From NCBI GenBank assembly GCA_964057225.1, contig OZ059896.1:4712001-4776000 (forward strand): a DNA stretch of 64,000 bases, written 5' to 3'. Position numbers and translations under genes: made by a program. How positions within the stretch are numbered: position 1 is the first letter of the stretch; each line of letters starts with the position of its first letter. This DNA comes from Auanema rhodensis. Its lineage: Eukaryota > Animalia > Nematoda. Below are positions 15,001 through 64,000 of the stretch, one piece after another. The notes under the pieces were generated by a model. The model was not told where the DNA came from, ran no database searches, and saw only the letters and a program-made list of their open reading frames with translations.

Positions 15001-15682
15001 AAAAAATTTTTGTCAAAATGTTTTTGGAAGCAATTTTGAGTGTACATGGAAACTCAACATACACTAATGCATCATTTTTCAAACGATCATAACTAATTTT
15101 TGTATTAAGCTTTTCTTATTGTAGTATAGTGCATTCGATGCGGACTTTTAAGCTGCGTCGATCTGTGTTATCAGATTTCCGCTAGCTTAAAAATGCACCG
15201 AGATATCAACTGATATAAGTTCACACTTATATTCTCGATTTTCACCCTGAAGAATTAATTTTTTCGTTGGATAACATTGTCCATCGTTTTTGCCTCAAAA
15301 AAAGGAATCTAAAAACATCTACTTTTTGCGAAATTATTTTGAAATTTTTCGAAAAAATTTTGTCAATATAAGTTCACACTTATATCCTCGATTTTCACCC
15401 TGAAGAATTAATTTTTTCGTTGAATAACATTGTCCATCGTTTTTGCCTCGAAAAAAGGAATCTAGAAACACCTACTTTTCGCTAAATTATTTTGAAATTT
15501 TTCGAAAAAATTTTTGTCAAAATGTTTTTGGAAGCAATTTTGAGTGTACATGGAAACGCAACCTACACTAATGCATCATTTTTCAAACGATCATAACTAA
15601 TTTTTGTATTAAGCTTTTCTTAATGTAGTATAGTGCATTCGATGCGGACTTTTAAGCTGCGTCGATCTGTGTTATCAGATTT
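1..15682 (-). repeat. 351-bp satellite array, left subfamily (~44-45 monomers, runs off the window edge)
   Basis: CAAAC(A/G)ATCATAACTAA recurs at 1, 352, 703 and onward. The array is the reverse complement of the one at 35912-64000. Diagnostic variants on the + strand: TTTTTGCTAAATT, CGTTTTTGCC, TTTTTCGAAAAAA. It ends at ...GTTATCAGATTT. Confidence 0.98.
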
Positions 15683-15703
15683 ACTTCAACTTCTAATCAA
15701 CAA

Positions 15704-15728
15704 CCCAACGGCCCTCTTTAGGGCCACA
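15704..15728 (+). promoter_or_regulatory. Histone mRNA 3' stem-loop (SLBP-binding hairpin), orphaned from its coding sequence
   Basis: CCCAAC-GGCCCT-CTTT-AGGGCC-ACA: 6-bp stem and 4-nt loop (15710-15725) with A/C-rich flanks, matching the histone 3' hairpin consensus. C at loop position 1 is the C. elegans form. Confidence 0.9.
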
Positions 15729-16050
15729 TTTAAATTTGATGTATTCATAATGATTTATAATATAATACTGTGTCTGTCTTGTCTTTTTTTGCTATGTAAT
15801 GATAATTGATAGGATATGTTTCGCTGTTATGTAAAGGAGAATCCCTATCTTTGATACTCCATATCCATCTCTATTTTTTTTTATGAATTTCATTAATTAT
15901 GCTTTCATGTTGATAACAACAACAGTGATCATATCTAATGCCTCACATGTTTCTATTCCACGTTTGTTCGCAAATAAACAGTTGTTTATGTTATTCTTAT
16001 CGTTTATATAAAATTTAAATATACATTTCTAGAATTTCTAGCAAAATTAA

Positions 16051-16160
16051 GCGCCAATATGCTTGGTGGCGATTACAATGGGTTTTTGCGCGGTGACCTC
16101 TACAGCACTAGTATATAACGGAGATGCTAGGGTTACTATTCAACACACAGCTTGATCAGC
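16051..16160 (+). promoter_or_regulatory. Putative histone H4 promoter and 5' UTR
   Basis: GC-richer patch with CCAAT (16054-16058), GTATATAA (16111-16118), an initiator-like TCA about 30 nt downstream (16140-16142), and a short leader to the ATG at 16161. Confidence 0.65.
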
Positions 16161-16205
16161 ATGTCTGAACGTGGTAAAGGAGGAAAAGGTCTTGAATTTA
16201 TATGA
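16161..16205 (+). pseudogene. H4: Histone H4 5' fragment (MSERGKGGKGLEFI*)
   Basis: ATG TCT GAA CGT GGT AAA GGA GGA AAA GGT CTT GAA versus canonical H4 MSGRGKGGKGLG: 10/12 identical, and both differences can be explained by GGA>GAA. Homology stops at about 16196. Too short for the ORF track. Confidence 0.88.
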
Positions 16206-16534
16206 TTGAATAATAAAATAGTGATTGACTTATCTGTGCTATGTGCTTGTTGTTGATTAGAAGTTGAAGTAATGATACTGACTACAACCGCTCTTTCTTT
16301 TTTTTAAAATGATATGATTGTTTAGATTTTCATTGCTTGCTTATGCTATTTTGAAAATTTGAATATTCTTAGTGTTGTATTTTTTTTAATTTTTATTTTT
16401 TCTCTTATTTTTTTCATATTTATACTTATATATATAAATATAATGTATATATTGAGAGATTTAGCTAACTAGTTAATATATTAGCATTTGTACAGTTCGG
16501 CTTTCATTGACTTTAGGAATGTGGGCGTGGTTTA

Positions 16535-17195
16535 TTTACTCTAGTATACTCTATACATCTCCTGATAATTGTTTGATCTTATTTATATTTGTTGAAAATT
16601 CTTCACATTTTCTTATTGAAAGTGCTTCTTGATATTTCTTATTTGCTTTTATTATTTGATTTTACAATGACTTGATATAACTTTCTTTTGTATCCTGTTC
16701 ATGGAATGAATAATTATATACTGTAGTATAATTTGTACATCTCTTGATAATTGTTTGTTCTTATTTGTATTTGTAGAAATTTTCCAAAACAAAATGCTTC
16801 TTAACACTTTTTCTTTGTTTTTAATACTTGATTTTACCATGACATGATATAACTTTCTTTCGTATCCTGCTCATGGAATAAATAATAGTTTACTCTAGTA
16901 TACTCTGTACATCTCCTGAAAATTTTCTCATTCTACTTTGTATTCTTTAAAAATTCTTCATGTTTTCTTACTGAAAATACTTCTTGATACTTCTTCTTTG
17001 CTTTTAATACTTGATTTTATCATGACTTGTTATAACTTTTTTTGAAACCTGTTTATATTTAAAATGTTTACTGATACTCTATAGTACGTTATATATCTCT
17101 TGATAATTTTCTCATTCTTCTTGGTATTTGTTAAAATTTTTTTATGTTTTCCTACTGAAGATGCTTCTTGATACTTTTTTTTGTTTTTAATACTT
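16535..17195 (-). repeat. ~180-bp satellite block 1 (T-rich strand on +; outermost monomers diverged)
   Basis: TTTACTCTAGTATACT...CTTGATAATTTTCTCATTC monomers begin just after GTGGGCGTGG at 16521-16530. Confidence 0.9.
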
Positions 17196-19412
17196 GAAGC
17201 ATTTTCAGTAAGAAAACATGAAGAAATTTTAACAAATACAAAGAAGAATGAGAAAATTATCAAGAGATGTACAAAGTATACTAGAGTAAACTATTATTTT
17301 ATCCATGAACAGGATACGAAAGAAAGTTATATCAAGTCATTGAAAAATCAAGTATTAAAAACAAAGAAAAAGTATCAAGAAGCATTTTCAGTAAGAAAAC
17401 ATGAAGAAATTTTAAAGAATACAATTAAGAATGAGAAAATTATCAGGAGATGTACAAAGTATACTAGAGTAAACTATTATTTATTCCATGAACAGGATAC
17501 GAAAGAAAGTTATAACAAGTCATGGTAAAATCAAGTATTAAAAACAAAAAAAAAGTATCAAGAAGCATTTTCAGTAAGAAAACATGAAGAAATTTTAACA
17601 AATACAAATAAGAATGAGAAAATTATCAAGAGATGTATAACATATTATAGAGTATCAGTAAACATTTAAAATATGAACAGGTTTCAAAAAAAGTAATATC
17701 AACTCATGGGGAAATCAAGTTTTAAAAGCAAAGAAGAAGTATCAAGAAGGATTTTCATTAAGAAAACATGAAGAAATTTTAACAAATACAAATAAGAATG
17801 AGAAAATTATCAAGAGATGTATAACATATTATAGAGTATCAGTAAACATTTAAAATATGAACAGGTTTCAAAAAAAGTAATATCAATTCATGGGTAAGTA
17901 TTAAAAGCAGAGAAGAAGTATCAAGAAGGATTTTCAGTAAGAAAACATGAAGAAATTTTAACAAATACAAAGAAGAATGAAAAAATTATCAAGAGATGCA
18001 TAACGTATTATAGAGTATCAGTAAACATTTAAAATATGAACAGATTTCAAAAAAAGTAATATCATTTCATGGGGAGGTATTAAAAACAAAAAAAAGTATC
18101 AAGAAGCATTTTCAGTAAGATAACATGAAGAAATTTCAACAAATACAAAAAAGAATGAGAAAATTATCGAAAGATGCATAACATATTATAGAGTATCAGT
18201 AAACATTTGGAATATGAACAGGTTTCAAAAAAAGTAATATCAATTCATGGGGAAGTATTAAAAGCAGAGAAGAAGTATCAAGAAGGATTTTCAGTAAGAA
18301 AACATGAAGAAATTTTAACAAATACAAAGAAGAATGAAAAAATTATCAAGAGATGCATAACGTATAATAGAGTATCAGTAAACATTTAAAATATGAACAG
18401 GTTTCAAAAAAGGTAATATCATTTCATGGGGAAGTATTAAAAGCAAAGAAGAAGTATCAAGAAGGATTTTCAATAAGAAAACATGAAGAAATTTTAACAA
18501 ATACAAAGAAGAATGAAAAAATTATCAAGAGATGCATAACGTATTGTAGAGTATCAGTAAACATTTAAAATATGAACAGATTTCAAAAAAAGTAATATCA
18601 TTTCATGGGGAAGTATTAAAAACAAAAAAAAGTATCAAGAAGCATTTTCAGTAAGATAACATGAAGAAATTTCAACAAATACAAAAAAGAATGAGAAAAT
18701 TATCGAAAGATGCATAACATATTATAGAGTATCAGTAAACATTTGGAATATGAACAGGTTTCAAAAAAAGTAATATCAATTCATGGAGAAGTATTAAAAG
18801 CAGAGAAGAAGTATCAAGAAGGATTTTCAGTAAGAAAACATGAAGAAATTTTAACAAATACAAAGAAGAATGAAAAAATTATCAAGAGATGCATAACGTA
18901 TTATAGAGTATCAGTAAACATTTAAAATATGAACAGATTTCGAAAAAAGTAATATCATTTCATGGGGAAGTATTAAAAGCAAAGAAGAAGTATCAAGAAG
19001 GATTTTCAATAAGAAAACATGAAGAAATTTTAACAAATACAAAGAAGAATGAAAAAATTATCAAGAGATGCATAACGTATTATAGAGTATCAGTAAACAT
19101 TTAAAATATGAACAGGTTTCAAAAAAAGTAATATCATTTCATGGGGAAGTATTAAAAGCAAAGAAGAAGTATCAAGAAGGATTTTCAATAAGAAAACATG
19201 AAGAAATTTTAACAAATACAAAGAAGAATGAAAAAATTATCAAGAGATGCATAACGTATTATAGAGTATCAGTAAACATTTAAAATATGAACAGGTTTCA
19301 AAAAAAGTAATATCATTTCATGGGGAAGTATTAAAAGCAAAGAAGAAGTATCAAGAAGGATTTTCAATAAGAAAACATGAAGAAATTTCAACAAATACAA
19401 ATAAGAATGAAA
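17196..19412 (+). repeat. ~180-bp satellite block 2 (A-rich strand on +, ~12 monomers, inverted relative to its neighbours)
   Basis: GAAGCATTTTCAGTAAGAAAACATGAAGAAATTTT repeats with 179-bp and 183-bp monomer classes. Junctions: TACTTGA|AGCATTTTC (~17196) and AAGAATGAAA|GAA|CCTTCTTG (~19413). Confidence 0.95.
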
Positions 19413-19415
19413 GAA

Positions 19416-22400
19416 CCTTCTTGATACTTCTTCTTTGCTTTTAAAACTTGATTTTACCATGACTTGTTATAACTTTTTTTGAAACCTGTTCATATTTAAA
19501 ATGTTTACTGATACTCTATAGTACGTTATATATCTCTTGATAATTTTCTCATTCTTATTTGTATTTGTTGAAATTTCTTCATGTTTTCTTATTGAAAATC
19601 CTTCTTGTTACTTCTTCTTTGCTTTTAATACTTCCCCATGAAATGATATTACCTTTTTTGAAACCTGTTCATATTTTAAATGTTTACTGATACTCTATAA
19701 TATGTTATACATCTCTTGATAATTTTCTCATTCTTATTTGTATTTGTTGAAATTTCTTCATGTTATCTTACTGAAAATGCTTCATGATACTTCTTCTTTG
19801 CTTTTAATACTTCCCCATGAAATGATATTACCTTTTTTGAAACCTGTTCATATTTTAAATGTTTACTGATACTCTATTATACGTTATGCATCTCTTGATA
19901 ATTTTTTCATTCTTCTTTGTATTTGTTAAAATTTCTTCATGTTTTCTTATTGAAAATCCTTCTTGTTACTTCTTCTTTGCTTTTAATACTTCCCCATGAA
20001 ATGATATTACCTTTTTTGAAACCTGTTCATATTTTAAATGTTTACTGATACTCTATAATATGTTATACATCTCTTGATAATTTTCTCATTCTTATTTGTA
20101 TTTGTTGAAATTTCTTCATGTTTTCTTACTGAAAATCCTTCTTGATACTTCTTCTCTGCTTTTAATACTTCCCCATGAATTGATATTACTTTTTTTGAAA
20201 CCTGTTCATATTTCAAATGTTTACTGATACTCTATAATATGTTATGCATCTTTCGATAATTTTCTCATTCTTTTTTGTATTTGTTAAAATTTCTTCATGT
20301 TTTCTTACTGAAAATCCTTCTTGATACTTCTTCTTTGCTTTTAAAACTTGATTTTACCATGACTTGTTATAACTTTTTTTGAAACCTGTTCATATTTAAA
20401 ATGTTTACTGATACTCTATAGTACGTTATATATCTCTTGATAATTTTCTCATTCTTATTTGTATTTGTTGAAATTTCTTCATGTTTTCTTATTGAAAATC
20501 CTTCTTGTTACTTCTTCTTTGCTTTTAATACTTCCCCATGAAATGATATTACCTTTTTTGAAACCTGTTCATATTTTAAATGTTTACTGATACTCTATAA
20601 TATGTTATACATCTCTTGATAATTTTCTCATTCTTATTTGTATTTGTTGAAATTTCTTCATGTTATCTTACTGAAAATGCTTCTTGATACTTTTTTTTGT
20701 TTTTAATACTTGATTTTACCTTGACTTGATATTACTTTCTTTCGTATCATGTTCATGGAATAAATAATAGTTTACTCTAGTATACTTTGTACATCTCTTG
20801 ATAATTTTCTCATTCTTATTTGTATTTGTTGAAATTTCTTCATGTTTTCTTATTGAAAATCCTTCTTGATACTTCTTCTTCGCTTTTAATACTTCCCCAT
20901 GAAATGATATTACTTTTTTTGAAACCTGTTCATATTTTAAATGTTTACTGATACTCTATTATACGTTATGCATCTCTTGATAATTTTTTCATTCTTCTTT
21001 GTATTTGTTAAAATTTCTTCATGTTTTCTTACTGAAAATCCTTCTTGATACTTCTTCTCTGCTTTTAATACTTCCCCATGAATTGATATTACTTTTTTTG
21101 AAACCTGTTCATATTTCAAATGTTTACTGATACTCTATAATATGTTATGCATCTTTCGATAATTTTCTCATTCTTTTTTGTATTTGTTAAAATTTCTTCA
21201 TGTTTTCTTACTGAAAATCCTTCTTGATACTTCTTCTTTGCTTTTAAAACTTGATTTTACCATGACTTGTTATAACTTTTTTTGAAACCTGTTCATATTT
21301 AAAATGTTTACTGATACTCTATAGTACGTTATATATCTCTTGATAATTTTCTCATTCTTATTTGTATTTGTTGAAATTTCTTCATGTTTTCTTATTGAAA
21401 ATCCTTCTTGTTACTTCTTCTTTGCTTTTAATACTTCCCCATGAAATGATATTACCTTTTTTGAAACCTGTTCATATTTTAAATGTTTACTGATACTCTA
21501 TAATATGTTATACATCTCTTGATAATTTTCTCATTCTTATTTGTATTTGTTGAAATTTCTTCATGTTATCTTACTGAAAATGCTTCTTGATACTTTTTTT
21601 TGTTTTTAATACTTGATTTTACCTTGACTTGATATTACTTTCTTTCGTATCATGTTCATGGAATAAATAATAGTTTACTCTAGTATACTTTGTACATCTC
21701 TTGATAATTTTCTCATTCTTATTTGTATTTGTTGAAATTTCTTCATGTTTTCTTATTGAAAATCCTTCTTGATACTTCTTCTTCGCTTTTAATACTTCCC
21801 CATGAAATGATATTACTTTTTTTGAAACCTGTTCATATTTTAAATGTTTACTGATACTCTATAATATGTTATGCATCTTTCGATAATTTTCTCATTCTTT
21901 TTTGTATTTGTTAAAATTTCTTCATGTTTTCTTACTGAAAATCCTTCTTGATACTTCTTCTTTGCTTTTAAAACTTGATTTTACCATGACTTGTTATAAC
22001 TTTTTTTGAAACCTGTTCATATTTAAAATGTTTACTGATACTCTATAGTACGTTATATATCTCTTGATAATTTTCTCATTCTTATTTGTATTTGTTGAAA
22101 TTTCTTCATGTTTTCTTATTGAAAATCCTTCTTGTTACTTCTTCTTTGCTTTTAATACTTCCCCATGAAATGATATTACCTTTTTTGAAACCTGTTCATA
22201 TTTTAAATGTTTACTGATACTCTATAATATGTTATACATCTCTTGATAATTTTCTCATTCTTATTTGTATTTGTTGAAATTTCTTCATGTTATCTTACTG
22301 AAAATGCTTCTTGATACTTTTTTTTGTTTTTAATACTTGATTTTACCTTGACTTGATATTACTTTCTTTCGTATCATGTTCATGGAATAAATAATAGTTT

Positions 22401-25400
22401 ACTCTAGTATACTTTGTACATCTCTTGATAATTTTCTCATTCTTATTTGTATTTGTTGAAATTTCTTCATGTTTTCTTATTGAAAATCCTTCTTGATACT
22501 TCTTCTTCGCTTTTAATACTTCCCCATGAAATGATATTACTTTTTTTGAAACCTGTTCATATTTTAAATGTTTACTGATACTCTATTATACGTTATGCAT
22601 CTCTTGATAATTTTTTCATTCTTCTTTGTATTTGTTAAAATTTCTTCATGTTTTCTTACTGAAAATCCTTCTTGATACTTCTTCTCTGCTTTTAATACTT
22701 CCCCATGAATTGATATTACTTTTTTTGAAACCTGTTCATATTTCAAATGTTTACTGATACTCTATAATATGTTATGCATCTTTCGATAATTTTCTCATTC
22801 TTTTTTGTATTTGTTAAAATTTCTTCATGTTTTCTTACTGAAAATCCTTCTTGATACTTCTTCTTTTCTTTTAAAACTTGATTTTACCATGACTTGTTAT
22901 AACTTTTTTTGAAACCTGTTCATATTTAAAATGTTTACTGATACTCTATAGTACGTTATATATCTCTTGATAATTTTCTCATTCTTATTTGTATTTGTTG
23001 AAATATCTTCATGTTTTCTTATTGAAAATCCTTCTTGATACTTCTTCTTTGCTTTTAAAACTTGATTTTACCATGATTTGTTATAACTTTTTTTGAAACC
23101 TGTTCATATTTTAAATGTTTACTGATACTCTATAATACGTTATGCATCTCTTGATAATTTTTTCATTCTTCTTTGTATTTGTTAAAAATTTCTTCATGTT
23201 TTCTTACTGAAAATCCTTCTTGATACTTCTTCTCTGCTTTTAATACTTCCCCATGAATTGATATTACTTTTTTTGAAACCTGTTCATATTTCAAATGTTT
23301 ACTGATACTCTATAATATGTTATGCATCTTTCGATAATTTTCTCATTCTTTTTTGTATTTGTTAAAATTTCTTCATGTTTTCTTACTGAAAATCCTTCTT
23401 GATACTTCTTCTTTTCTTTTAAAACTTGATTTTACCATGACTTGTTATAACTTTTTTTGAAACCTGTTCATATTTAAAATGTTTACTGATACTCTATAGT
23501 ACGTTATATATCTCTTGATAATTTTCTCATTCTTATTTGTATTTGTTGAAATATCTTCATGTTTTCTTATTGAAAATCCTTCTTGATACTTCTTCTTTGC
23601 TTTTAAAACTTGATTTTACCATGACTTGTTATAACTTTTTTTGAAACCTGTTTATATTTAAAATGTTTACTGATACTCTATAGTACGTTATATATCTCTT
23701 GATAATTTTCTCATTCTTATTTGTATTTGTTGAAATATCTTCATGTTTTCTTATTGAAAATCCTTCTTGATACTTCTTCTTTGCTTTTAATACTTCCCCA
23801 TGAAATGATATTACTTTTTTCGAAATCTGTTCATATTTTAAATGTTTACTGATACTCTATAATACGTTATGCATCTCTTGATAATTTTTTCATTCTTCTT
23901 TGTATTTGTTAAAATTTCTTCATGTTTTCTTACTGAAAATCCTTCTTGATACTTCTTCTCTGCTTTTAATACTTCCCCATGAATTGATATTACTTTTTTT
24001 GAAACCTGTTCATATTCCAAATGTTTACTGATACTCTATAATATGTTATGCATATTTCGATAATTTTCTCATTCTTTTTTGTATTTGTTAAAATTTCTTC
24101 ATGTTTTCTTACTGAAAATCCTTCTTGATACTTCTTCTTTGCTTTTAAAACTTGATTTTACCATGACTTGTTATAACTTTTTTTGAAACCTGTTCATATT
24201 TAAAATGTTTACTGATACTCTATAGTACGTTATATATCTCTTGATAATTTTCTCATTCTTCTGTGTATTTGTTAAAATTTCTTCATGTTTTCCTACTGAA
24301 GATGCTTCTTGATACTTTTTTTTGTTTTTAATACTTGATTTTACCATGACTTGTTATAACTTTCTTTCGTATCATGTTCATGGAATAAATAATATTTTAC
24401 TCTAGTATATTTTGTACATCTCTTGATAATTTTCTCATTCTTTTTTGTATTTGTTAAAATTTCTTCCTGTTTTCTTACTGAAAATGCTTCTTGATACTTT
24501 TTTTTTGTTTTTAATACTTGATTTTATCATGACTTGATTTTACTTTTGTTGAAACCTGTTCATATTTTAAATGTTTACTGATACTCTAGTATACTTTGTA
24601 CATCTTTCGATAATTTTGTCATTCTTTTTTGTATTTGTTAAAATTTCTTCATGTTTTCTTACTGAAAATCCTTCTTGATACTTCTTCTCTGCTTTTAATA
24701 CTTCCCCATGAATTGATATTACTTTTTTTGAAACCTGTTCATATTCCAAATGTTTACTGATACTCTATAATATGTTATGCATATTTCGATAATTTTCTCA
24801 TTCTTTTTTGTATTTGTTAAAATTTCTTCATGTTTTCTTACTGAAAATCCTTCTTGATACTTCTTCTTTGCTTTTAAAACTTGATTTTACCATGACTTGT
24901 TATAACTTTTTTTGAAACCTGTTCATATTTAAAATGTTTACTGATACTCTATAGTACGTTATATATCTCTTGTTAATTTTCTCATTCTTCTGTGTATTTG
25001 TTAAAATTTCTTCATGTTTTCCTACTGAAGATGCTTCTTGATACTTTTTTTTGTTTTTAATACTTGATTTTACCATGACTTGTTATAACTTTCTTTCGTA
25101 TCATGTTCATGGAATAAATAATATTTTACTCTAGTATATTTTGTACATCTCTTGATAATTTTCTCATTCTTTTTTGTATTTGTTAAAATTTCTTCCTGTT
25201 TTCTTACTGAAAATCCTTCTTGATACTTCTTCTTTGCTTTTAAAACTCGATTTTCCCATGAATTGATATTACTTTTTTTGAAACCTGTTCATATTTTAAA
25301 TGTTTACTGATACTCTATAGTACGTTATATATCTCTTGATAATTTTCTCATTCTTCTTTGTATTTGTTAAAATTTCTTCATGTTTTCTTACTGAAAATCC

Positions 25401-31400: not shown

Positions 31401-34400
31401 CTTTGTATTCTTGAAAATTTCTTCATGTTTTCTTACTGAAAATCCTTCTTGATACTTCTTCTTTGCTTTTAAAACTCGATTTTCCCATGAATTGATATTA
31501 CTTTTTTTGAAACCTGTTCATATTTTAAATGTTTACTGATACTCTATAATACGTTATACATTTCTTGATAATTTTCTCATTCTTCTTTGTATTTGTTAAA
31601 ATTTCTTCATGTTTTCTTATTGAAAATCCTTCTTGATACTTCTTCTTTGCTTTTAATACTTCCCCATGAAATGATATTACTTTTTTTGAAACCTGTTCAT
31701 ATTTTAAATGTTTACTGATACTCTATAATATGTTATGCATCTTTCGATAATTTTCTCATTCTTTTTTGTATTTGTTAAAATTTCTTCATGTTTTCTTACT
31801 GAAAATCCTTCTTGATACTTCTTCTTTGCTTTTAAAACTTGATTTTACCATGACTTGTTATAACTTTTTTTGAAACCTGTTCATATTTAAAATGTTTACT
31901 GATACTCTATAATACGTTATGCATCTCTTGATAATTTTTTCATTCTTCTTTGTATTTGTTAAAATTTCTTCATGTTTTCTTACTGAAAATCCTTCTTGAT
32001 ACTTTTTTTTTGTTTTTAATACTTGATTTTATCATGACTTGATATTACTTTTGTTGAAACCTGTTCATATTTTAAATGTTTACTGATACTCTAGTATAAT
32101 TTGTACATCTTTCGATAATTTTCTCATTCTTCTTTGTATTTGTTAAAATTTCTTCATGTTTTCTTACTGAAAATCCTTCTTGATACTTCTTCTTTGCTTT
32201 TAAAACTTGATTTTACCATGACTTGTTATAACTTTTTTTGAAACCTGTTCATATTTAAAATGTTTACTGATACTCTATAATACGTTATGCATCTCTTGAT
32301 AATTTTTTCATTCTTCTTTGTATTTGTTAAAATTTCTTCATGTTTTCTTACTGAAAATCCTTCTTGATACTTCTTCTTTGCTTTTAAAACTTGATTTTAC
32401 CATGACTTGTTATAACTTTTTTTGAAACCTGTTCATATTCCAAATGTTTACTGATACTCTATAATATGTTATGCATCTTTCGATAATTTTCTCATTCTTT
32501 TTTGTATTTGTTGAAATTTCTTCATGTTTTCTTACTGAAAATCCTTCTTGATACTTCTTCTTTGCTTTTAAAACTTGATTTTACCATGACTTGTTATAAC
32601 TTTTTTTGAAACCTGTTCATATTCCAAATGTTTACTGATACTCTATAATATGTTATGCATCTTTCGATAATTTTCTCATTCTTTTTTGTATTTGTTAAAA
32701 TTTCTTCATGTTTTCCTACTGAAGATGCTTCTTGATACTTTTTTTTGTTTTTAATACTTGATTTTACCATGACTTGTTATAACTTTCTTTCGTATCATGT
32801 TCATGGAATAAATAATATTTTACTCTAGTATATTTTGTACATCTCTTGATAATTTTCTCATTCTTTTTTGTATTTGTTAAAATTTCTTCCTGTTTTCTTA
32901 CTGAAAATGCTTCTTGATACTTTTTTTTTGTTTTTAATACTTGATTTTATCATGACTTGATTTTACTTTTGTTGAAACCTGTTCATATTTTAAATGTTTA
33001 CTGATACTCTAGTATACTTTGTACATCTTTCGATAATTTTGTCATTCTGTTTTGTATTTGTTAAAATTTCTTCATGTTTTCTTACTGAAAATGCTTCTTG
33101 ATACTTTTTTTTTGTTTTAATACTTGATTTTATCATGACTTGATTTTACTTTTGTTGAAACCTGTTCATATTTTAAATGTTTACTGATACTCTAGTATAC
33201 TTTGTACATCTTTCGATAATTTTCTCATTCTTCTTTGTATTTGTTAAAATTTCTTCATGTTTTCTTACTAAAAATCCTTCTTGATACTTCTTCTTTGCTT
33301 TTAAAACTTGATTTTACCATGACTTGTTATAACTTTTTTTGAAACCTGTTCATATTTAAAATGTTTACTGATACTCTATAATACGTTATGCATCTCTTGA
33401 TAATTTTTTCATTCTTCTTTGTATTTGTTAAAATTTCTTCATGTTTTCTTACTGAAAATGCTTCTTGATACTTTTTTTTTGTTTTTAATACTTGATTTTA
33501 TCATGACTTGATATTACTTTTGTTGAAACCTGTTCATATTTTAAATGTTTACTGATACTCTAGTATAATTTGTACATCTTTCGATAATTTTCTCATTCTT
33601 CTTTGTATTTGTTAAAATTTCTTCATGTTTTCTTACTGAAAATCCTTCTTGATACTTCTTCTTTGCTTTTAAAACTTGATTTTACCATGACTTGTTATAA
33701 CTTTTTTTGAAACCTGTTCATATTTAAAATGTTTACTGATACTCTATAGTACGTTATATATCTCTTGATAATTTTCTCATTCTTCTTTGTATTTGTTAAA
33801 ATTTCTTCATGTTTTCTTACTGAAAATGCTTCTTGATACTTTTTTTTTGTTTTTAATACTTGATTTTATCATGACTTGATATTACTTTTGTTGAAACCTG
33901 TTCATATTTTAAATGTTTACTGATACTCTAGTATAATTTGTACATCTTTCGATAATTTTCTCATTCTTCTTTGTATTTGTTAAAATTTCTTCATGTTTTC
34001 TTGCTGAAAATCCTTCTTGATACTTCTTCTTTGCTTTTAAAACTTGATTTTACCATGACTTGTTATAACTTTTTTTGAAACCTGTTCATATTTAAAATGT
34101 TTACTGATACTCTATAGTACGTTATATATCTCTTGATAATTTTCTCATTCTTCTTTGTATTTGTTAAAATTTCTTCATGTTTTCTTACTGAAAATGCTTC
34201 TTGATATTTTTTTTTTGTTTTTAATACTTGATTTTATCATGACTTGATATTACTTTTGTTGAAACCTGTTCATATTTTAAATGTTTACTGATACTCTAGT
34301 ATAATTTGTACATCTTTCGATAATTTTCTCATTCTTCTTTGTATTTGTTAAAATTTCTTCATGTTTTCTTGCTGAAAATCCTTCTTGATACTTCTTCTTT

Positions 34401-34826
34401 GCTTTTAAAACTTGATTTTACCATGACTTGTTATAACTTTTTTTGAAACCTGTTCATATTTAAAATGTTTACTGATACTCTATAGTACGTTATATATCTC
34501 TTGATAATTTTCTCATTCTTCTTTGTATTTGTTAAAATTTCTTCATGTTTTCTTACTGAAAATCCTTCTTGATACTTCTTCTTTGCTTTTAATACTTTCC
34601 CATGAATTGATATTACTTTTTTTGAATCCTGTTCATATTTTAAATGTTTACTGATACTCTATAATACGTTATGCATCTCTTGATAATTTTCTCATTCTTA
34701 TTTGTATTTGTTAAAATTTCTTCATGTTTTCTTACTGAAAATGCTTCTTGATACTTTTTTTTTGTTTTTAATACTTAATTTTTCAATGACTTGTTATAAC
34801 TTTCTTTCGTATCCTGTTCATGGATA
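19416..34826 (-). repeat. ~180-bp satellite block 3 (~15.4 kb, ~85 monomers, several higher-order repeats)
   Basis: Continuous T-rich monomers of about 179-185 bp, with higher-order periods of 900/903, 724, 1468 and 368 bp. Confidence 0.97.
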
Positions 34827-35060
34827 ACAAATAAGAACAAACAATTATCAAGAGATGTACAAATTATACTACAGTATATAATTATTCATTCCATGAACAG
34901 GATACAAAAGAAAGTTATATCAAGTCATTGTAAAATCAAATAATAAAAGCAAAGAAGAAAAATCAAGAAGCACTTTCAATAAGAAAATGTGAAGAATTTT
35001 CAACAAATATAAATAAGATCAAACAATTATCAGGAGATGTATAGAGTATACTAGAGTAAA
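34827..35060 (+). repeat. ~180-bp satellite block 4 (diverged monomers; mirror of 16535-16768)
   Basis: Orientation switch at ...CATGGATAA|CAAATAAGAAC; reverse complement of 16535-16768. Confidence 0.9.
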
Positions 35061-35387
35061 TAAACCACGCCCACATTCCTAACGTCAATGAAAGCCGAAC
35101 TGTACAAATGCTAATATATTAACTAGTTAGCTAAATCTCAATATATACATTATATTTATATATATAAGTATAAATATGAAAAAAAAAAGAGAAAAAATAA
35201 AAATTAAAAAAAATACAACACTAAGAATATTCAAATTTTCAAAATAGCATAAGCAAGCAATGAAAATCTAAACAATCATATCATTTAAAAAAAAAGAAAG
35301 AGCGGTTGTAGTCAGCATCATTACTTCAACTTCTAATCAACAACAAGCACATAGCACAGATAAGTCAATCACTATTTTATTATTCAA

Positions 35388-35432
35388 TCATATAAATTCA
35401 AGACCTTTTCCTCCTTTACCACGTTCAGACAT
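35388..35432 (-). pseudogene. H4: Histone H4 5' fragment, second copy (MSERGKGGKGLEFI*)
   Basis: Exact reverse complement of 16161-16205. Confidence 0.88.
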
Positions 35433-35542
35433 GCTGATCAAGCTGTGTGTTGAATAGTAACCCTAGCATCTCCGTTATATACTAGTGCTGTAGAGGTCAC
35501 CGCGCAAAAACCCATTGTAATCGCCACCAAGCATATTGGCGC
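35433..35542 (-). promoter_or_regulatory. Putative histone H4 promoter and 5' UTR, second copy
   Basis: TTATATAC at 35475-35482 and ATTGG near 35535; mirror of 16051-16160. Confidence 0.65.
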
Positions 35543-35865
35543 TTAATTTTGCCGCTCAATTCTAGAAATGTATATTTAAATTTTATATAAACGATAAGAA
35601 TAACATAAACAACTGTTTATTTGCGAACAAACGTGGAATAGAAACATGTGAGGCATTAGATATGATCACTGTTGTTGTTATCAACATGAAAGCATAATTA
35701 ATGAAATTCATAAAAAAAAATAGAGATGGATATGGAGTATCAAAGATAGGGATTCTCCTTTACATAACAGCGAAACATATCCTATCAATTATCATTACAT
35801 AGCAAAAAAAGACAAGACAGACACAGTATTATATTATAAATCATTATGAATACATCAAATTTAAA

Positions 35866-35890
35866 TGTGGCCCTAAAGAGGGCCGTTGGG
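35866..35890 (-). promoter_or_regulatory. Histone 3' stem-loop, second copy
   Basis: TGT-GGCCCT-AAAG-AGGGCC-GTTGGG on the + strand (hairpin 35869-35884), the reverse complement of 15710-15725. Confidence 0.9.
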
Positions 35891-35911
35891 TTGTTGATTA
35901 GAAGTTGAAGT

Positions 35912-38900
35912 AAATCTGATAACACAGATCGACGCAGCTTAAAAATCCGCATCGAATGCACTATACTACATGGAGAAACGCTCAATACAAAAATTAGTTA
36001 TGATCGTTTGAAAAATGATGCATTAGTGTATGTTGAGTTTTCATGTACACTCAACAATGCATCCAAAAACATTTTGACAAAAATTTTCCCGAAAAATTTC
36101 AAAATAATTTCACAAAAAGTAGATGTTTTTAGATTCCTTTTTTCAAGACAAAGACGATGGACATTGTTATTCAACAAAAAAATTAATTCTTCAGGGTGAA
36201 AATCGAGGATATAAGTGTGAACTTATATCAGTTGATATCTCGGTGCATTTTTAAGCTAGCGCAAATCTGATAACACAGATCGACGCAGCTTAAAAATCCA
36301 CATCGAATGCACTATACTACATTGGGAAACACTCAATACAAAAATTAGTTATGATCGTTTGAAAAATGATGCATTAGTGTATGTTGAGTTTCCATGTACA
36401 CTCAACATTGCTTCCAAAAACATTTTGACAAAAATTTTCCCGAAAAATTTCAAAATAATTTCACAAAAAGTAGATGTTTTTAGATTCCTTTTTTCAAGAC
36501 AAAGACGATGGACATTGTTATTCAACAAAAAAATTAATTCTTCAGGGTGAAAATCGAGGATATAAGTGTGAACTTATATCAGTTGATATCTCGGTGCATT
36601 TTTAAGCTAGCGCAAATCTGATAACACAGATCGACGCAGCTTAAAAATCCACATCGAATGCACTATACTACATTGGGAAACACTCAATACAAAAATTAGT
36701 TATGATCGTTTGAAAAATGATGCATTAGTGTATGTTGAGTTTCCATGTACACTCAACATTGCTTCCAAAAACATTTTGACAAAAATTTTCCCGAAAAATT
36801 TCAAAATAATTTCACAAAAAGTAGATGTTTTTAGATTCCTTTTTTCAAGACAAAGACGATGGACATTGGTATTCAACAAAAAAATTAATTCTTCACGGTG
36901 AAAATCGAGGATATAAGTGTGAACTTATATCAGTTGATATCTCGGTGCATTTTTAAGCTAGCGCAAATCTGATAACACAGATCGACGCAGCTTAAAAATC
37001 CACATCGAATGCACTATACTACATTGGGAAACACTCAATACAAAAATTAGTTATGATCGTTTGAAAAATGATGCATTAGTGTATGTTGAGTTTCCATGTA
37101 CACTCAACATTGCTTCCAAAAACATTTTGACAAAAATTTTCCCGAAAAATTTCAAAATAATTTCACAAAAAGTAGATGTTTTTAGATTCCTTTTTTCAAG
37201 ACAAAGACGATGGACATTGTTATTCAACAAAAAAATTAATTCTTCACGGTGAAAATCGAGGATATAAGTGTGAACCTATATCAGTTGATATCTCGGTGCA
37301 TTTTCAAGCTAGCGCAAATCTGATAACACAGATCGACGCAGCTTAAAAATCCGCATCGAATGCACTATACTACATGGAGAAACGCTCAATACAAAAATTA
37401 GTTATGATCGTTTGAAAAATGATGCATTAGTGTATGTTGAGTTTCCATGTACACTCAACAATGCTTCCAAAAACATTTTGACAAAAATTTTCCCGAAAAA
37501 TTTCAAAATAATTTCACAAAAAGTAGATGTTTTTAGATTCCTTTTTTCAAGACAAAGACGATGGACATTGTTATTCAACAAAAAAATTAATTCTTCACGG
37601 TGAAAATCGAGGATATAAGTGTGAACCTATATCAGTTGATATCTCGGTGCATTTTCAAGCTAGCGCAAATCTGATAACACAGATCGACGCAGCTTAAAAA
37701 TCCGCATCGAATGCACTATACTACATGGAGAAACGCTCAATACAAAAATTAGTTATGATCGTTTGAAAAATGATGCATTAGTGTATGTTGAGTTTTCATG
37801 TACACTCAACAATGCATCCAAAAACATTTTGACAAAAATTTTCCCGAAAAATTTCAAAATAATTTCACAAAAAGTAGATGTTTTTAGATTCCTTTTTTCA
37901 AGACAAAGACGATGGACAATGTTATTCAACGAAAAAATTAAATCTTCAGGGTGAAAATCGAGGATATAAGTGTGAACCTATATCAGTTGATATCCCGGTG
38001 CATTTTCAAGCTAGCGCAAATCTGATAACACAGATCGACGCAGCTTAAAAATCCGCATCGAATGCACTATACTACATTGAGAAAAGCTAAATACAAAAAT
38101 TAGTTATGATCGTTTGAAAAATGATGCATTAGTGTATGTTGAGTTTCCATGTACACTCAACATTGCTTCCAAAAACATTTTGACAAAAATTTTCCCGAAA
38201 AATTTCAAAATAATTTCACAAAAAGTAGATGTTTTTAGATTCCTTTTTTCAAGACAAAGACGATGGACATTGTTATTCAACAAAAAAATTAATTCTTCAC
38301 GGTGAAAATCGAGGATATAAGTGTGAACTTATATCAGTTGATATCTCGGTGCATTTTTAAGCTAGCGCAAATCTGATAACACAGATCGACGCAGCTTAAA
38401 AATCCACATCGAATGCACTATACTACATTGGGAAACACTCAATACAAAAATTAGTTATGATCGTTTGAAAAATGATGCATTAGTGTATGTTGAGTTTCCA
38501 TGTACACTCAACATTGCTTCCAAAAACATTTTGACAAAAATTTTCCCGAAAAATTTCAAAATAATTTCACAAAAAGTAGATGTTTTTAGATTCCTTTTTT
38601 CAAGACAAAGACGATGGACATTGTTATTCAACAAAAAAATTAATTCTTCACGGTGAAAATCGAGGATATAAGTGTGAACTTATATCAGTTGATATCTCGG
38701 TGCATTTTTAAGCTAGCGCAAATCTGATAACACAGATCGACGCAGCTTAAAAATCCACATCGAATGCACTATACTACATTGGGAAACACTCAATACAAAA
38801 ATTAGTTATGATCGTTTGAAAAATGATGCATTAGTGTATGTTGAGTTTCCATGTACACTCAACATTGCTTCCAAAAACATTTTGACAAAAATTTTCCCGA

Positions 38901-62900: not shown

Positions 62901-64000
62901 CTATATCAGTTGATATCTCGGTGCATTTTCAAGCTAGCGCAAATCTGATAACACAGATCGACGCAGCTTAAAAATCCGCATCGAATGCACTATACTACAT
63001 GGAGAAACGCTCAATACAAAAATTAGTTATGATCGTTTGAAAAATGATGCATTAGTGTATGTTGAGTTTCCATGTACACTCAACAATGCTTCCAGAAACA
63101 TTTTGACAAAAATTTTCCCGAAAAATTTCAAAATAATTTCACAAAAAGTAGATGTTTTTAGATTCCTTTTTTCAAGACAAAGACGATGGACATTGTTATT
63201 CAACAAAAAAATTAATTCTTCACGGTGAAAATCGAGGATATAAGTGTGAACCTATATCAGTTGATATCTCGGTGCATTTTCAAGCTAGCGCAAATCTGAT
63301 AACACAGATCGACGCAGCTTAAAAATCCGCATCGAATGCACTATACTACATGGAGAAACGCTCAATACAAAAATTAGTTATGATCGTTTGAAAAATGATG
63401 CATTAGTGTATGTTGAGTTTCCATGTACACTCAACAATGCTTCCAAAAACATTTTGACAAAAATTTTCCCGAAAAATTTCAAAATAATTTCACAAAAAGT
63501 AGATGTTTTTAGATTCCTTTTTTCAAGACAAAGACGATGGACATTGTTATTCAACAAAAAAATTAATTCTTCACGGTGAAAATCGAGGATATAAGTGTGA
63601 ACCTATATCAGTTGATATCTCGGTGCATTTTCAAGCTAGCGCAAATCTGATAACACAGATCGACGCAGCTTAAAAATCCGCATCGAATGCACTATACTAC
63701 ATGGAGAAACGCTCAATACAAAAATTAGTTATGATCGTTTGAAAAATGATGCATTAGTGTATGTTGAGTTTCCATGTACACTCAACATTGCTTCCAAAAA
63801 CATTTTGACAAACATTTTCCCGAAAAATTTCAGAATAAATTTACAAAAAGTAGATGTTTTTAGATTCCTTTTTTCAAGACAAAGACGATGGACATTGTCA
63901 TTCAACAAAAAAATTAATTCTTCACGGTGAAAATCGAGGATATAAGTGTGAACCTATATCAGTTGATATCTCGGTGCATTTTCAAGCTAGCGCAAATCTG
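35912..64000 (+). repeat. 351-bp satellite array, right subfamily (80 monomers, runs off the window edge)
   Basis: ORF-track starts are spaced exactly 351 bp apart, with one 353-bp unit (40922 to 41275). AAATCTG at 35912 recurs at 63994 = 35912 + 80x351 + 2. Diagnostic variants: TTTTCCCG, AATTTCACAAA, AGACAAAGACG. Confidence 0.99.

What the first reader, a model, noticed from the sequence alone, without database searches (positions are those of the whole stretch)
15681..35913. Giant nested palindrome: inverted 351-bp arrays and 1.09-kb inverted arms enclosing an ~18-kb core of a different satellite
Seen: both 351-bp arrays break at the same monomer nucleotide (...GTTATCAGATTT| on the left, |AAATCTGATAAC... 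on the right), join the same arm, and face opposite ways. An ordinary insertion would leave the flanks co-oriented and in phase, so this looks like a fold-back or inverted duplication that also marks an array polarity switch (inference). The arms differ at several sites and the flanking arrays are distinct subfamilies, which argues against a read fold-back artefact. The layout is symmetric repeats around a distinct core, reminiscent of fission-yeast centromeres or Foldback-type elements. It could be a specialised chromosomal domain or the scar of a fusion or breakage-fusion-bridge event.
Basis: partly seen in the sequence, partly recalled or inferred. Interest (0 to 1): 0.8.

Follow-up and report, generated by a model that had tools for sequence, protein, structure and literature searches.

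The report
Histone-relic-bounded satellite island, mirror-flanked
In the repeat-rich DNA that the roundworm Auanema rhodense is reported to discard from its body cells, a 20-kb island of a rare 184-letter repeat sits between two mirror-image leftovers of the histone gene cluster; it is one of nine copies of an old DNA-copying accident, not a centromere or a jumping gene.

Summary
The 351-bp array runs forward at 1-15683 and inverted at 35911-64000. Both arrays break at the same monomer base and join 1085-bp inverted arms (98.8% identical) around an 18-kb core of 184-bp satellite.

New here:
- The genome is not human. It is the Auanema rhodense germline assembly: the published AT-1 probe matches 115,040 times.
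- The arms are relics of the core-histone repeat unit: H3 3' stem-loop, H3-H4 spacer, H4 promoter plus 11 codons, a deletion, then the H4-H2B spacer. They are not transposon ends.
- The 351|arm joint carries a 23-nt inverted copy of sequence 560 bp further in, which is a template-switch or end-joining signature.
- The core has three more strand switches (J1, J2, J3).
- The structure is not unique. There are nine islands (eight on contig C4, one on C5), in both orientations, sharing the four kinds of junction letter for letter wherever each occurs.
- The 184-bp satellite seems to occur almost only in these islands.
- Arms group by side across islands, so the palindrome predates its amplification.

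Best reading: an old fold-back or template-switch inverted duplication, later amplified segmentally and probably without function. Earlier notes of this scan report similar fold-back strand switches in other satellites of this genome. Interest is modest.

The parts
1..15683 (+). 351-bp satellite array, forward orientation, 'L-type' subfamily (about 44 monomers, 95.7% alike)
   Evidence: TRF; monomer identity matrix and 15 diagnostic consensus sites. The diagnostic 28-mer occurs 96,581 times in the genome.
15684..15706 (+). 23-nt exact inverted copy of 16250-16272, sitting at the 351|arm joint in place of the native start of the H3 3'UTR. Read as a templated insertion or template-switch scar.
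   Evidence: Sequence. Alignment to the true histone unit and to the C1 relic, both of which have a different sequence here. This 23-mer next to the stem-loop occurs only in the 16 arm copies genome-wide.
15705..15751 (+). Histone mRNA 3' stem-loop relic (from histone H3)
   Evidence: Rfam RF00032, 28.3 bits, E 2e-5, below the gathering score of 34. 100% identical over 15707-15766 to the sequence after the H3 stop codon in the C3 histone unit.
15707..16194 (+). H3-H4 intergenic spacer, H4 promoter (TATATAA at about 16113) and the first 11 codons of H4 (ATG at 16161-16163, reading MSERGKGGKGL then out of H4). The promoter faces the core.
   Evidence: Alignment A1 to the 3688-bp histone unit on C3 (about 89% by BLAST; 88-100% per 60-nt block) and to the C1 relics (95%).
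16195..16520 (+). Relic of the H4-H2B spacer. The remaining 92 H4 codons and the H4 stem-loop are deleted. Contains the native 23-mer at 16250-16272.
   Evidence: Alignment A1; 91-92% identity to the C3 unit.
16530..16768 (+). Diverged 184-bp-type monomers forming the inner end of the arm. Left/right arm homology ends at 16768.
   Evidence: BLAST: about 76-83% identity to the core monomers, and the arm match ends at 16768/34827; segment map.
16769..17196 (+). 184-bp-type monomers, forward orientation, running up to strand switch J1
17159..17204 (.). J1: hairpin-type strand switch (forward to inverted 184-type array). The surrounding 246 nt fold into a stem of about 100 bp with a 28-nt loop.
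   Evidence: Dyad search, 56 of 60 positions matching with a 44-nt spacer. DNA fold -66.8 kcal/mol, z = -16.9. The exact 36-mer occurs 8 times in the genome, always inside an island. The microRNA-like Rfam hits here are this hairpin.
17196..19412 (-). 179-bp variant of the core satellite, inverted orientation (12.3 copies)
   Evidence: TRF; inverted-repeat pairs; map.
19412..19547 (.). J2: strand switch (inverted to forward) with a 134-nt spacer that is the remainder of one monomer
   Evidence: Inverted repeat I1: 792-nt arms, 96% complementary. Dyad 59 of 60. The exact 36-mer occurs 10 times in the genome, at least once in all nine islands.
19408..34821 (+). Main 184-bp satellite array (84.5 copies, 87% matches)
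   Evidence: TRF. The diagnostic 20-mer occurs only 802 times genome-wide, with the first hit at C4:1965149.
34821..34827 (.). J3: head-on joint between the forward 184-bp array and the inverted inner end of the right arm, with no local dyad
   Evidence: Sequence and dyad search, 32 of 60. The exact 41-mer occurs 10 times in the genome, at arm inner ends in 8 islands.
34827..35910 (-). Right arm: the same histone-unit relic inverted ('beta' haplotype). H4-relic ATG at 35432-35430 on the minus strand, facing the core.
35911..64000 (-). 351-bp satellite array, inverted orientation, 'R-type' subfamily (80 monomers, 98% alike)

Best explanation
This is one copy of a single-origin composite satellite 'island' in the tandem-repeat block near one end of an Auanema rhodense chromosome-scale contig (C4). 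A preprint reports such blocks as germline-restricted.

Inferred order of events:
1. A fragment of the core-histone repeat unit became joined to the abundant 351-bp satellite. The fragment ran from the H3 3' end through the H4 promoter and start into the H4-H2B spacer. The joint carries a 23-nt inverted copy of nearby sequence, a signature of template switching or polymerase-theta-type end joining. On its other side the relic borders a minor 184-bp satellite.
2. Fold-back or template-switch events (J1, J2, J3) inverted parts of the 184-bp array. They also produced a second, inverted copy of the [351 | relic | 184] boundary, giving mirror-image arms and oppositely oriented 351-bp flanks.
3. The two arms and their flanks diverged (9-14 differences per 1.09 kb; flanks became different 351-bp subfamilies).
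4. The whole island with its flanks was then copied as large segments, in both orientations, to nine places.
5. The window's copy further lost a partial arm duplication by recombination between direct repeats.

The structure most likely has no function of its own. It is a record of replication and repair errors that persist and amplify in gene-poor satellite DNA.

Shown: the anatomy, the histone origin, the single origin of all junctions, the copy census, and the grouping of arms and flanks. Inferred: the repair pathways, the order of events, germline restriction of this exact stretch, and the lack of function.
For: Genome identity: the published A. rhodense AT-1 FISH probe matches exactly 115,040 times at 176-bp spacing. 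Assembly size is 180.9 Mb against the 180 Mb reported.

Histone origin: Rfam stem-loop hit. C3:18.51-18.53 Mb holds a 3688-bp tandem unit with intact H2B, H2A, H3 and H4. The arm aligns to its H3-H4 spacer, H4 start and H4-H2B spacer, with the H4 body deleted.

Templated joint: the left 23-mer is an exact inverted copy of the native spacer 23-mer, is absent at that position from the C3 and C1 versions, and occurs only in the 16 arm copies. Templated inserts are a documented mark of polymerase-theta end joining in the C. elegans germline (PMC4490562).

Single origin and amplification, all junction words exact:
- 351|arm 36-mer: 16 copies.
- J1: 8 copies.
- J2: 10 copies.
- J3: 10 copies.
- Together they define 9 islands, and J2 orientation shows that both orientations exist.
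- Every arm copy examined lies at a 351 -> arm -> 184 boundary.

Palindrome older than amplification: arms fall into an alpha clade and a beta clade. Differences are 0-6 (alpha) and 0-8 (beta) within clades, and 9-14 between clades and between the two arms of one island. Each arm type keeps its own 351-bp flank subfamily, including in the flipped island P6.

The 184-bp satellite is rare: 802 hits of a 20-mer present in 171 of about 215 sampled monomers. None of the hits listed lies before C4:1.965 Mb.

Fold-back signatures: J1 is a stem of about 100 bp with a 28-nt loop and J2 has a 134-nt spacer. Fold-back inverted duplications with spacers and short inverted microhomology are well documented (PMC3907307).

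No ORF of note in arms or core.
Against: - The outer arms are now 18 kb apart and J3 has no local dyad. The exact event that made the second arm cannot be reconstructed, and several histories fit.
- The flanking 351-bp arrays show no mirror register. There is therefore no direct trace that the flanks were copied in the same fold-back, although array turnover could have erased it.
- The H4 proximal promoter (16041-16100) and the stem-loop are the best-conserved parts of the relic, 98-100% against 85-97% elsewhere. That leaves some room for retained activity.
- Where the 351-bp polarity flips back between successive islands was not found.
- No read, expression, small-RNA or chromatin data could be consulted.
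- That the 351-bp repeat is the preprint's 'AT-2', and that this stretch is eliminated from the soma, are inferences from abundance and position.
Confidence: 0.75

Rival explanations
1. The islands are working hairpin or double-stranded RNA sources. The two inward-facing relic H4 promoters transcribe convergently across a core full of strand switches (J1, J2). The resulting long hairpins feed nematode small-RNA pathways that mark the satellites for silencing or for elimination.
For: Both relic promoters face the core. The proximal promoter block 16041-16100 is 98-100% identical to the functional histone unit and to the C1 relic. J1 lies about 1 kb downstream and folds into a stem of about 100 bp. 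J2 has 792-nt arms, 96% complementary. Another first-reader note (s1-407141) raised the same idea.
Against: Conservation of the arms is explained by recent copying: same-type arms differ at only 0-8 sites. The TATA-to-ATG segment has an 11-nt gap and only 88% identity to the true unit. Nine islands of a rare satellite are a small source compared with about 34 Mb of 351-bp repeat. No RNA data were available.
Confidence: 0.08
2. The palindrome is an assembly artefact: a false inverted join of satellite contigs or a chimeric long read.
For: Satellite arrays and inverted repeats are classic sources of misassembly. No reads could be inspected here.
Against: The two arms differ at 12 sites and the flanks are different subfamilies. 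All four junction types recur exactly in up to nine islands with different core lengths (13-38 kb) and different arm variants. The source preprint reports about 29x HiFi coverage of repeat regions, with most reads uniquely mappable.
Confidence: 0.04
3. The island is a Foldback-like or composite mobile element whose inverted arms act as terminal repeats and which inserts at one specific nucleotide of the 351-bp monomer.
For: Inverted 1.09-kb ends. All 16 joints lie at the same monomer nucleotide. Earlier notes of this scan report site-specific elements in this genome's satellites.
Against: The flanks are inverted relative to each other and not co-oriented and in phase, so there is no target-site duplication. 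Each arm type carries its own flank subfamily, so flanks were copied with the island. The arms are histone-unit relics without subrepeats. There is no transposase-like ORF. Incomplete islands end in other satellites through ordinary breakpoints.
Confidence: 0.03
4. The islands are a specialised chromosomal domain, for example chromosome-specific landmarks for homologue recognition within otherwise shared terminal satellite blocks, or centromere-like units.
For: The 184-bp satellite and the arms are nearly confined to one contig: 8 of 9 islands are on C4. The preprint speculates that chromosome-specific repeats might aid homologue pairing. The symmetric layout superficially resembles a fission-yeast centromere.
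Against: There are multiple copies per chromosome and one on a second contig. No conserved short motif or binding-site array was identified. Rhabditid nematodes are holocentric (general knowledge, not tested here). The distribution is what local segmental duplication predicts.
Confidence: 0.05

Closest known systems
Fold-back (hairpin-primed) inverted duplications and replication template-switch rearrangements, as at human inv-dup breakpoints (PMC3907307) and breakage-fusion-bridge palindromes
   Same: There are two inverted copies descending from one junction, and spacers between inverted segments (28-44 nt at J1, 134 nt at J2). Breakpoints are simple, and short shared words are visible by eye at J1 and J2, though these were not tested against chance. 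The position is near a chromosome end.
   Different: The outer arms are 18 kb apart with a rearranged interior, so the original turn-around point is not identifiable. The product was later amplified to nine copies in both orientations. It all lies in satellite DNA of a nematode that discards such DNA from the soma.
Strand switches inside satellite arrays, as seen in complete assemblies of human and Arabidopsis centromeres (from my own knowledge) and in other satellites of this same genome (earlier notes s1-373195, s1-391297, s1-378785)
   Same: Arrays change polarity abruptly at a single breakpoint, and neighbouring arrays on either side belong to different homogenised subfamilies.
   Different: Here the switch in the 351-bp array is not a direct head-to-head joint. 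It is mediated by a histone-relic-bounded island of a second, rare satellite.
Polymerase-theta-mediated end joining with templated inserts in the C. elegans germline (PMC4490562, PMC4032859)
   Same: The junction carries an insert identical to nearby flanking sequence: 23 nt copied from 560 bp away.
   Different: The insert is in inverted orientation and longer than many reported inserts. The pathway is inferred from the scar alone. Correction of a quasi-palindrome by template switching would give the same result.
Drosophila Foldback (FB) elements
   Same: Long inverted ends around a central segment.
   Different: FB ends are built of short tandem subrepeats and the elements make target-site duplications (from my own knowledge). 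Here the ends are unique histone relics, the tandem repeats are in the middle, the flanks are inverted, and no transposase is present.
Fission-yeast regional centromeres (central core flanked by inverted inner and outer repeats)
   Same: Symmetric repeats around a distinct core.
   Different: There are nine copies, not one per chromosome. The core is itself a satellite. The host group is holocentric (general knowledge). No CENP-A data exist.
Large primate sex-chromosome palindromes maintained by arm-to-arm gene conversion
   Same: Kilobase-scale inverted arms with a spacer.
   Different: The arms are 98.8% identical, not above 99.9%. They group by side across islands and not by island, so there is no arm-to-arm homogenisation. 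There are no genes in the arms.

Membership tests
Fold-back / template-switch inverted duplication | Two inverted copies that descend from one original sequence, with shared private junctions | tested here: met
   Both arms carry the identical 351|arm 36-mer, including the 23-nt templated insert. The arms are 98.8% identical over 1085 bp.
Fold-back / template-switch inverted duplication | A turn-around joint with a short single-copy spacer and inverted microhomology | tested here: inconclusive
   The inner switches fit: J1 has a 28-44-nt loop and J2 a 134-nt spacer. The outer arms are separated by 18 kb of rearranged array and J3 has no local dyad, so the original turn-around of the arm duplication is not identifiable.
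Fold-back / template-switch inverted duplication | Support of each joint by spanning reads | not testable with these tools
   No read data. Indirect support comes from exact recurrence of each joint in 8-16 copies with different contexts.
Foldback-type / terminal-inverted-repeat transposon | Insertion footprint: co-oriented, in-phase flanks with a target-site duplication | tested here: not met
   The flanking 351-bp arrays are inverted and both end at the same monomer base in mirror image. The flank subfamily travels with the arm type.
Foldback-type / terminal-inverted-repeat transposon | Element-specific terminal repeats (subrepeat-built in FB) and a transposase in at least some copies | tested here: not met
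   The arms align to the histone repeat unit. The only ORF of 80 aa or more in 15600-36000 is a 115-aa TTG-start frame in satellite.
Regional centromere of the fission-yeast type | One such domain per chromosome | tested here: not met
   Eight islands on C4 and one on C5.
Regional centromere of the fission-yeast type | CENP-A chromatin on the core and heterochromatin on the flanks | not testable with these tools
   No chromatin data.
Gene-conversion-maintained palindrome (primate sex-chromosome type) | Arms of one palindrome more alike than arms of different palindromes | tested here: not met
   There are 9-13 differences between the two arms of one island, against 0-8 between same-side arms of different islands.
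Core-histone repeat unit (functional copy) | Intact histone reading frames with 3' stem-loops | tested here: not met
   Only 11 H4 codons remain, followed by a stop after 14 codons. The H3 body is absent. One stem-loop is retained at 28.3 bits, below Rfam's gathering score of 34. Intact genes exist on C3. The arm is therefore a relic.
Auanema rhodense germline-restricted terminal tandem-repeat block | The genome is the A. rhodense germline assembly | tested here: met
   The AT-1 FISH probe from the preprint matches exactly 115,040 times at 176-bp period. The assembly is 180.9 Mb against the 180 Mb reported.
Auanema rhodense germline-restricted terminal tandem-repeat block | Low somatic read depth, on the eliminated side of a telomere-addition site | not testable with these tools
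   Inferred only. The window lies 4.7 Mb from the end of a 23.6-Mb contig, is entirely satellite, and AT-1 arrays are nearby (preprint text).

The most novel reading that the evidence does not exclude
The nine islands are functional hairpin-RNA loci. Relic histone H4 promoters, captured into germline-only satellite DNA, drive convergent transcription through built-in fold-backs. This would yield small RNAs that direct heterochromatin formation on, or elimination of, the surrounding satellite block. A weaker variant is that they serve as chromosome-specific landmarks within otherwise shared terminal repeats.
Probability: 0.07. Interest if true: 0.8.

Novelty: new member of a known kind. Interest (0 to 1): 0.33.

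Why it matters
It gives a base-by-base natural history of how the large germline-only repeat blocks of a DNA-eliminating nematode are built. A fragment of the histone gene cluster was captured into a satellite. A rare new satellite lies beside the captured fragment. Strands were flipped by copying errors, and the whole package was then amplified in both directions. That supports the view that such blocks are places where repair scars accumulate and spread. It also supplies exact junction words that can serve as markers for checking assemblies, for chromosome-specific FISH, and for comparing strains. It does not point to a new mechanism unless the relic promoters prove to be active.

Tried and rejected
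1. Mirror register in the flanking 351-bp arrays: none. The mirror diagonal scores 94.75% and shifted diagonals 94.7-94.8%, so the palindrome proper is limited to the arms.
2. Origin of the 184-bp monomer from the histone H4-H2B spacer: local alignment against dinucleotide shuffles gave only z = 2-3, and a z = 4.9 hit on the opposite strand of another spacer looks spurious. Inconclusive and not claimed.
3. Relatedness of the 184-bp or 351-bp repeats to AT-1: none detected.
4. Selection on the relic promoter: window-wise identity is uneven but too sparse to test.
5. MicroRNA-family hits at 17068-17289 score far below the gathering scores. They are the J1 hairpin, not microRNA genes.
6. A unique mirror register at J2: shifted registers score as well as the true one, so its original extent cannot be read.
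8. Treating the 23-nt end repeats as transposon ends: rejected, because the right copy is native histone spacer.

Full report
**What is there**

The window is wall-to-wall satellite. A 351-bp repeat fills 1-15683 in one orientation and 35911-64000 in the other. Arrays of 179/184-bp repeats lie between them, and base skews flip accordingly. BLAST of the left boundary against the whole window finds a single long inverted match, 15366-16768 against 36228-34827, at 97.4%.

The non-satellite-351 part of the match is the 'arm'. It spans 15684-16768 on the left and 35910-34827 on the right. The two arms are 1085 bp long and 98.8% identical, with 12 differences. Both 351-bp arrays stop at the same monomer base, and the 36-mer across the joint is identical on the two sides.

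The flanking arrays are different homogenised subfamilies. Monomers are 95.7% alike on the left, 98.0% on the right and 93.9% across, with 15 fixed consensus differences. No mirror register exists beyond the arm.

Two additions:
- The inner 240 bp of each arm is already diverged 184-bp repeat.
- The core changes strand three more times, at J1 (about 17196), J2 (19412-19547) and J3 (34821-34827).

**Whose genome**

Earlier notes of this scan suggested the nematode Auanema rhodense and pointed to a 2026 preprint on its programmed DNA elimination. I tested this. The preprint's 28-nt FISH probe for its eliminated autosomal repeat AT-1 matches the window's assembly exactly 115,040 times at 176-bp spacing. 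The assembly is 180.9 Mb against the 180 Mb reported.

The diagnostic 28-mer of the 351-bp repeat occurs 96,581 times, about 34 Mb. That makes it one of the two dominant satellites. It is probably the preprint's second autosomal-terminal repeat, but this is an inference because the preprint's text gives no sequence for it.

The window lies 4.7 Mb from the end of a 23.6-Mb contig. This is the kind of terminal repeat block the preprint reports as germline-restricted. I could not test read depth.

**What the arms are**

The arm opens with a histone mRNA 3' stem-loop (Rfam RF00032, 28.3 bits, E 2e-5, below the gathering score). It also contains an H4-like start, MSERGKGGKGL, followed by a stop.

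A genome search with the arm found a 3688-bp tandem unit at C3:18.51-18.53 Mb. That unit encodes intact H2B, H2A, H3 and H4 on one strand. Alignment shows that the arm is this unit with pieces missing. In order, the arm contains:
- the sequence just after the H3 stop, with its stem-loop;
- the H3-H4 spacer;
- the H4 promoter and 33 nt of H4;
- a deletion of the rest of H4 and its stem-loop;
- about 330 bp of the H4-H2B spacer.

Identity to the C3 unit is 89-92%.

A second relic family lies at C1:3.37-3.47 Mb. It consists of a 5'-truncated H3, the spacer and a 3'-truncated H4, embedded between co-oriented 351-bp arrays. It is 95% identical to the arm and shares several indels with it against the C3 unit. 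A histone-unit variant therefore seems to have been a long-standing resident of the 351-bp satellite.

**The apparent terminal repeats**

The arm looks as if it had 23-nt terminal inverted repeats, at 15684-15706 and 16250-16272. The right one is native histone spacer, identical in the C3 unit. The left one replaces what the C3 and C1 versions have at the start of the H3 3'UTR. The left 23-mer followed by the stem-loop occurs nowhere in the genome except the 16 arm copies.

The 351|arm joint therefore carries a 23-nt insert copied in reverse from 560 bp away. Templated inserts are a hallmark of polymerase-theta end joining in the C. elegans germline (PMC4490562). Template-switch correction of a quasi-palindrome would give the same scar. 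The pathway is an inference.

**Not a one-off**

Exact-word censuses of the whole assembly gave these counts:
- 351|arm joint: 16 copies.
- J1: 8 copies.
- J2: 10 copies.
- J3: 10 copies.

Nearly every match is exact; only the second joint in Q1 and in Q2 has one mismatch. Together they define nine islands:

| Island | Contig | Position (Mb) |
|---|---|---|
| Q1 | C4 | 1.96 |
| Q2 | C4 | 2.10 |
| P6 | C4 | 3.19-3.23 |
| P2 | C4 | 3.84-3.86 |
| P3 | C4 | 4.05-4.06 |
| P1 (this window) | C4 | 4.73-4.75 |
| P5 | C4 | 5.26-5.27 |
| P4 | C4 | 5.44-5.45 |
| (unnamed) | C5 | 0.50-0.52 |

Segment maps of the fetched copies show the same order everywhere: 351 array, arm, strand-switching 184-bp array, inverted arm, inverted 351 array. 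Cores are 13-38 kb long.

Five islands have both full arms. P5's left arm is truncated and joined to an AT-1 array that has its own fold-back. Q1 and Q2 lack the second 351|arm joint. For the C5 island only one 351|arm joint was found.

The 184-bp repeat is rare. A 20-mer present in 171 of about 215 sampled monomers occurs only 802 times, and the listing begins at C4:1.965 Mb, inside island Q1. This repeat seems to live essentially only inside the islands. The full positional list was not shown, so that is a lower-confidence statement.

**Order of events**

Arms fall into two clades:
- alpha: P1-left, P6-right, P2/P3/P4-left. They differ from each other at 0-6 sites.
- beta: P1-right, P6-left, P2-P5-right, Q1/Q2-left. 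They differ at 0-8 sites. The C5 arm lies nearer beta.
- Alpha and beta arms differ at 9-14 sites, and so do the two arms of any one island.

Each arm type also carries its own 351-bp flank subfamily, including in P6, where everything is flipped. The orientation of J2 confirms that Q1, Q2, P6 and the C5 island are flipped relative to P2-P5 and P1.

Four conclusions follow:
- All arms descend from one junction.
- The inverted duplication happened once.
- The arms then diverged without arm-to-arm homogenisation.
- Only afterwards was the island copied, with its flanks, in both orientations.

P2-P5 carry an extra partial arm (arm positions 280-1085) about 2 kb inside the left arm. The window's left arm looks like the product of a deletion between these direct repeats, though its variant pattern is mosaic.

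Arms have two kinds of inner end. One kind flips at J3 after about 240 bp of diverged repeat. The other runs on about 430 bp further and flips at J1. The window has one of each.

**Nature of the switches**

- J1 is a textbook hairpin turn: 246 nt fold into a stem of about 100 bp with a 28-nt loop (z = -16.9).
- J2 has a 134-nt spacer equal to the rest of one monomer.
- J3 is a plain head-on breakpoint.

Short shared words are visible by eye at J1 and J2, but I did not test them against chance. These features match fold-back or template-switch inverted duplications as described at human breakpoints (PMC3907307). They also match notes from this scan on other satellites of the same genome (I did not re-test those).

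**What it is not**

It is not a Foldback-like transposon:
- The flanks are inverted and not co-oriented, and there is no target-site duplication.
- The flanks travel with the arms.
- The arms are histone relics.
- There is no transposase-like ORF.

It is not a fission-yeast-style centromere: there are eight copies on one contig. Rhabditid nematodes are also holocentric, which is general knowledge and was not tested here.

It is not a conversion-maintained palindrome.

It is very unlikely to be an assembly artefact, given exact recurrence in different contexts and the diverged arms. Only reads can settle that.

**What remains open**

- The relic H4 promoters face inward, and their proximal 60 nt are 98-100% conserved. 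Convergent transcription through the fold-backs into hairpin RNA cannot be excluded. I give it about 7%.
- The origin of the 184-bp repeat stays unresolved.

**Verdict**

This is a real, well-defined structure. It is best read as an old fold-back-type inverted duplication at a histone-relic boundary between two satellites, later amplified segmentally to nine copies in DNA that the worm probably discards from its soma. It is a new, nicely documented instance of a known kind of rearrangement, and of modest interest unless the relic promoters turn out to be active.

Noticed in passing
L048 (G000:C1:3425001-3435000), and C1:3.37-3.47 Mb generally: There are at least 12 copies of a histone relic embedded between co-oriented 351-bp arrays at 3.3-16-kb spacing. 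The relic has an H3 lacking its first ~38 codons and fused to satellite-derived codons, the H3-H4 spacer, and an H4 truncated after about 60 codons. [quoted passage not shown]
   Followed up: partly
L049 (G000:C3:18511001-18521000): The core histone cluster is a 3688-bp tandem unit with H2B, H2A, H3 and H4 all on one strand. Each gene is followed by a near-identical stem-loop. At least seven units were seen.
   Followed up: partly
G000:C4:5254001-5255250 (L037): The left edge of island P5 is an AT-1 (176-bp) array. It reverses strand about one monomer before it joins the arm inside the H4-H2B spacer relic. This is another fold-back joint, and a place where AT-1, the island and the 351-bp repeat meet.
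   Followed up: partly
G000:C4, 1.96-5.45 Mb: Island orientation is not random. The three islands at 1.96-3.23 Mb are flipped relative to the five at 3.84-5.45 Mb. This hints at a megabase-scale inverted arrangement with an axis near 3.5 Mb, although the spacings do not mirror exactly.
   Followed up: no
window 15213-15520: There is a 153-bp internal duplication within the last 351-bp monomer before the left arm (504-bp monomer), absent from the right side. It is why the long inverted match stops at 15366.
   Followed up: partly
G000:C4:1964554-1965517 and 2098543-2099506 (L045, L046): Islands Q1 and Q2 have a doubled left boundary: a 354-bp arm fragment, two 184-bp monomers, a short piece of 351-bp repeat and then the full arm. 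The second joint differs by one base. Q1 and Q2 are 134 kb apart and 97.7% identical over 10 kb.
   Followed up: partly
window 17181-17528: The only ORF of 80 aa or more in the region (115 aa, TTG start) lies in AT-rich satellite across J1. It looks spurious.
   Followed up: no
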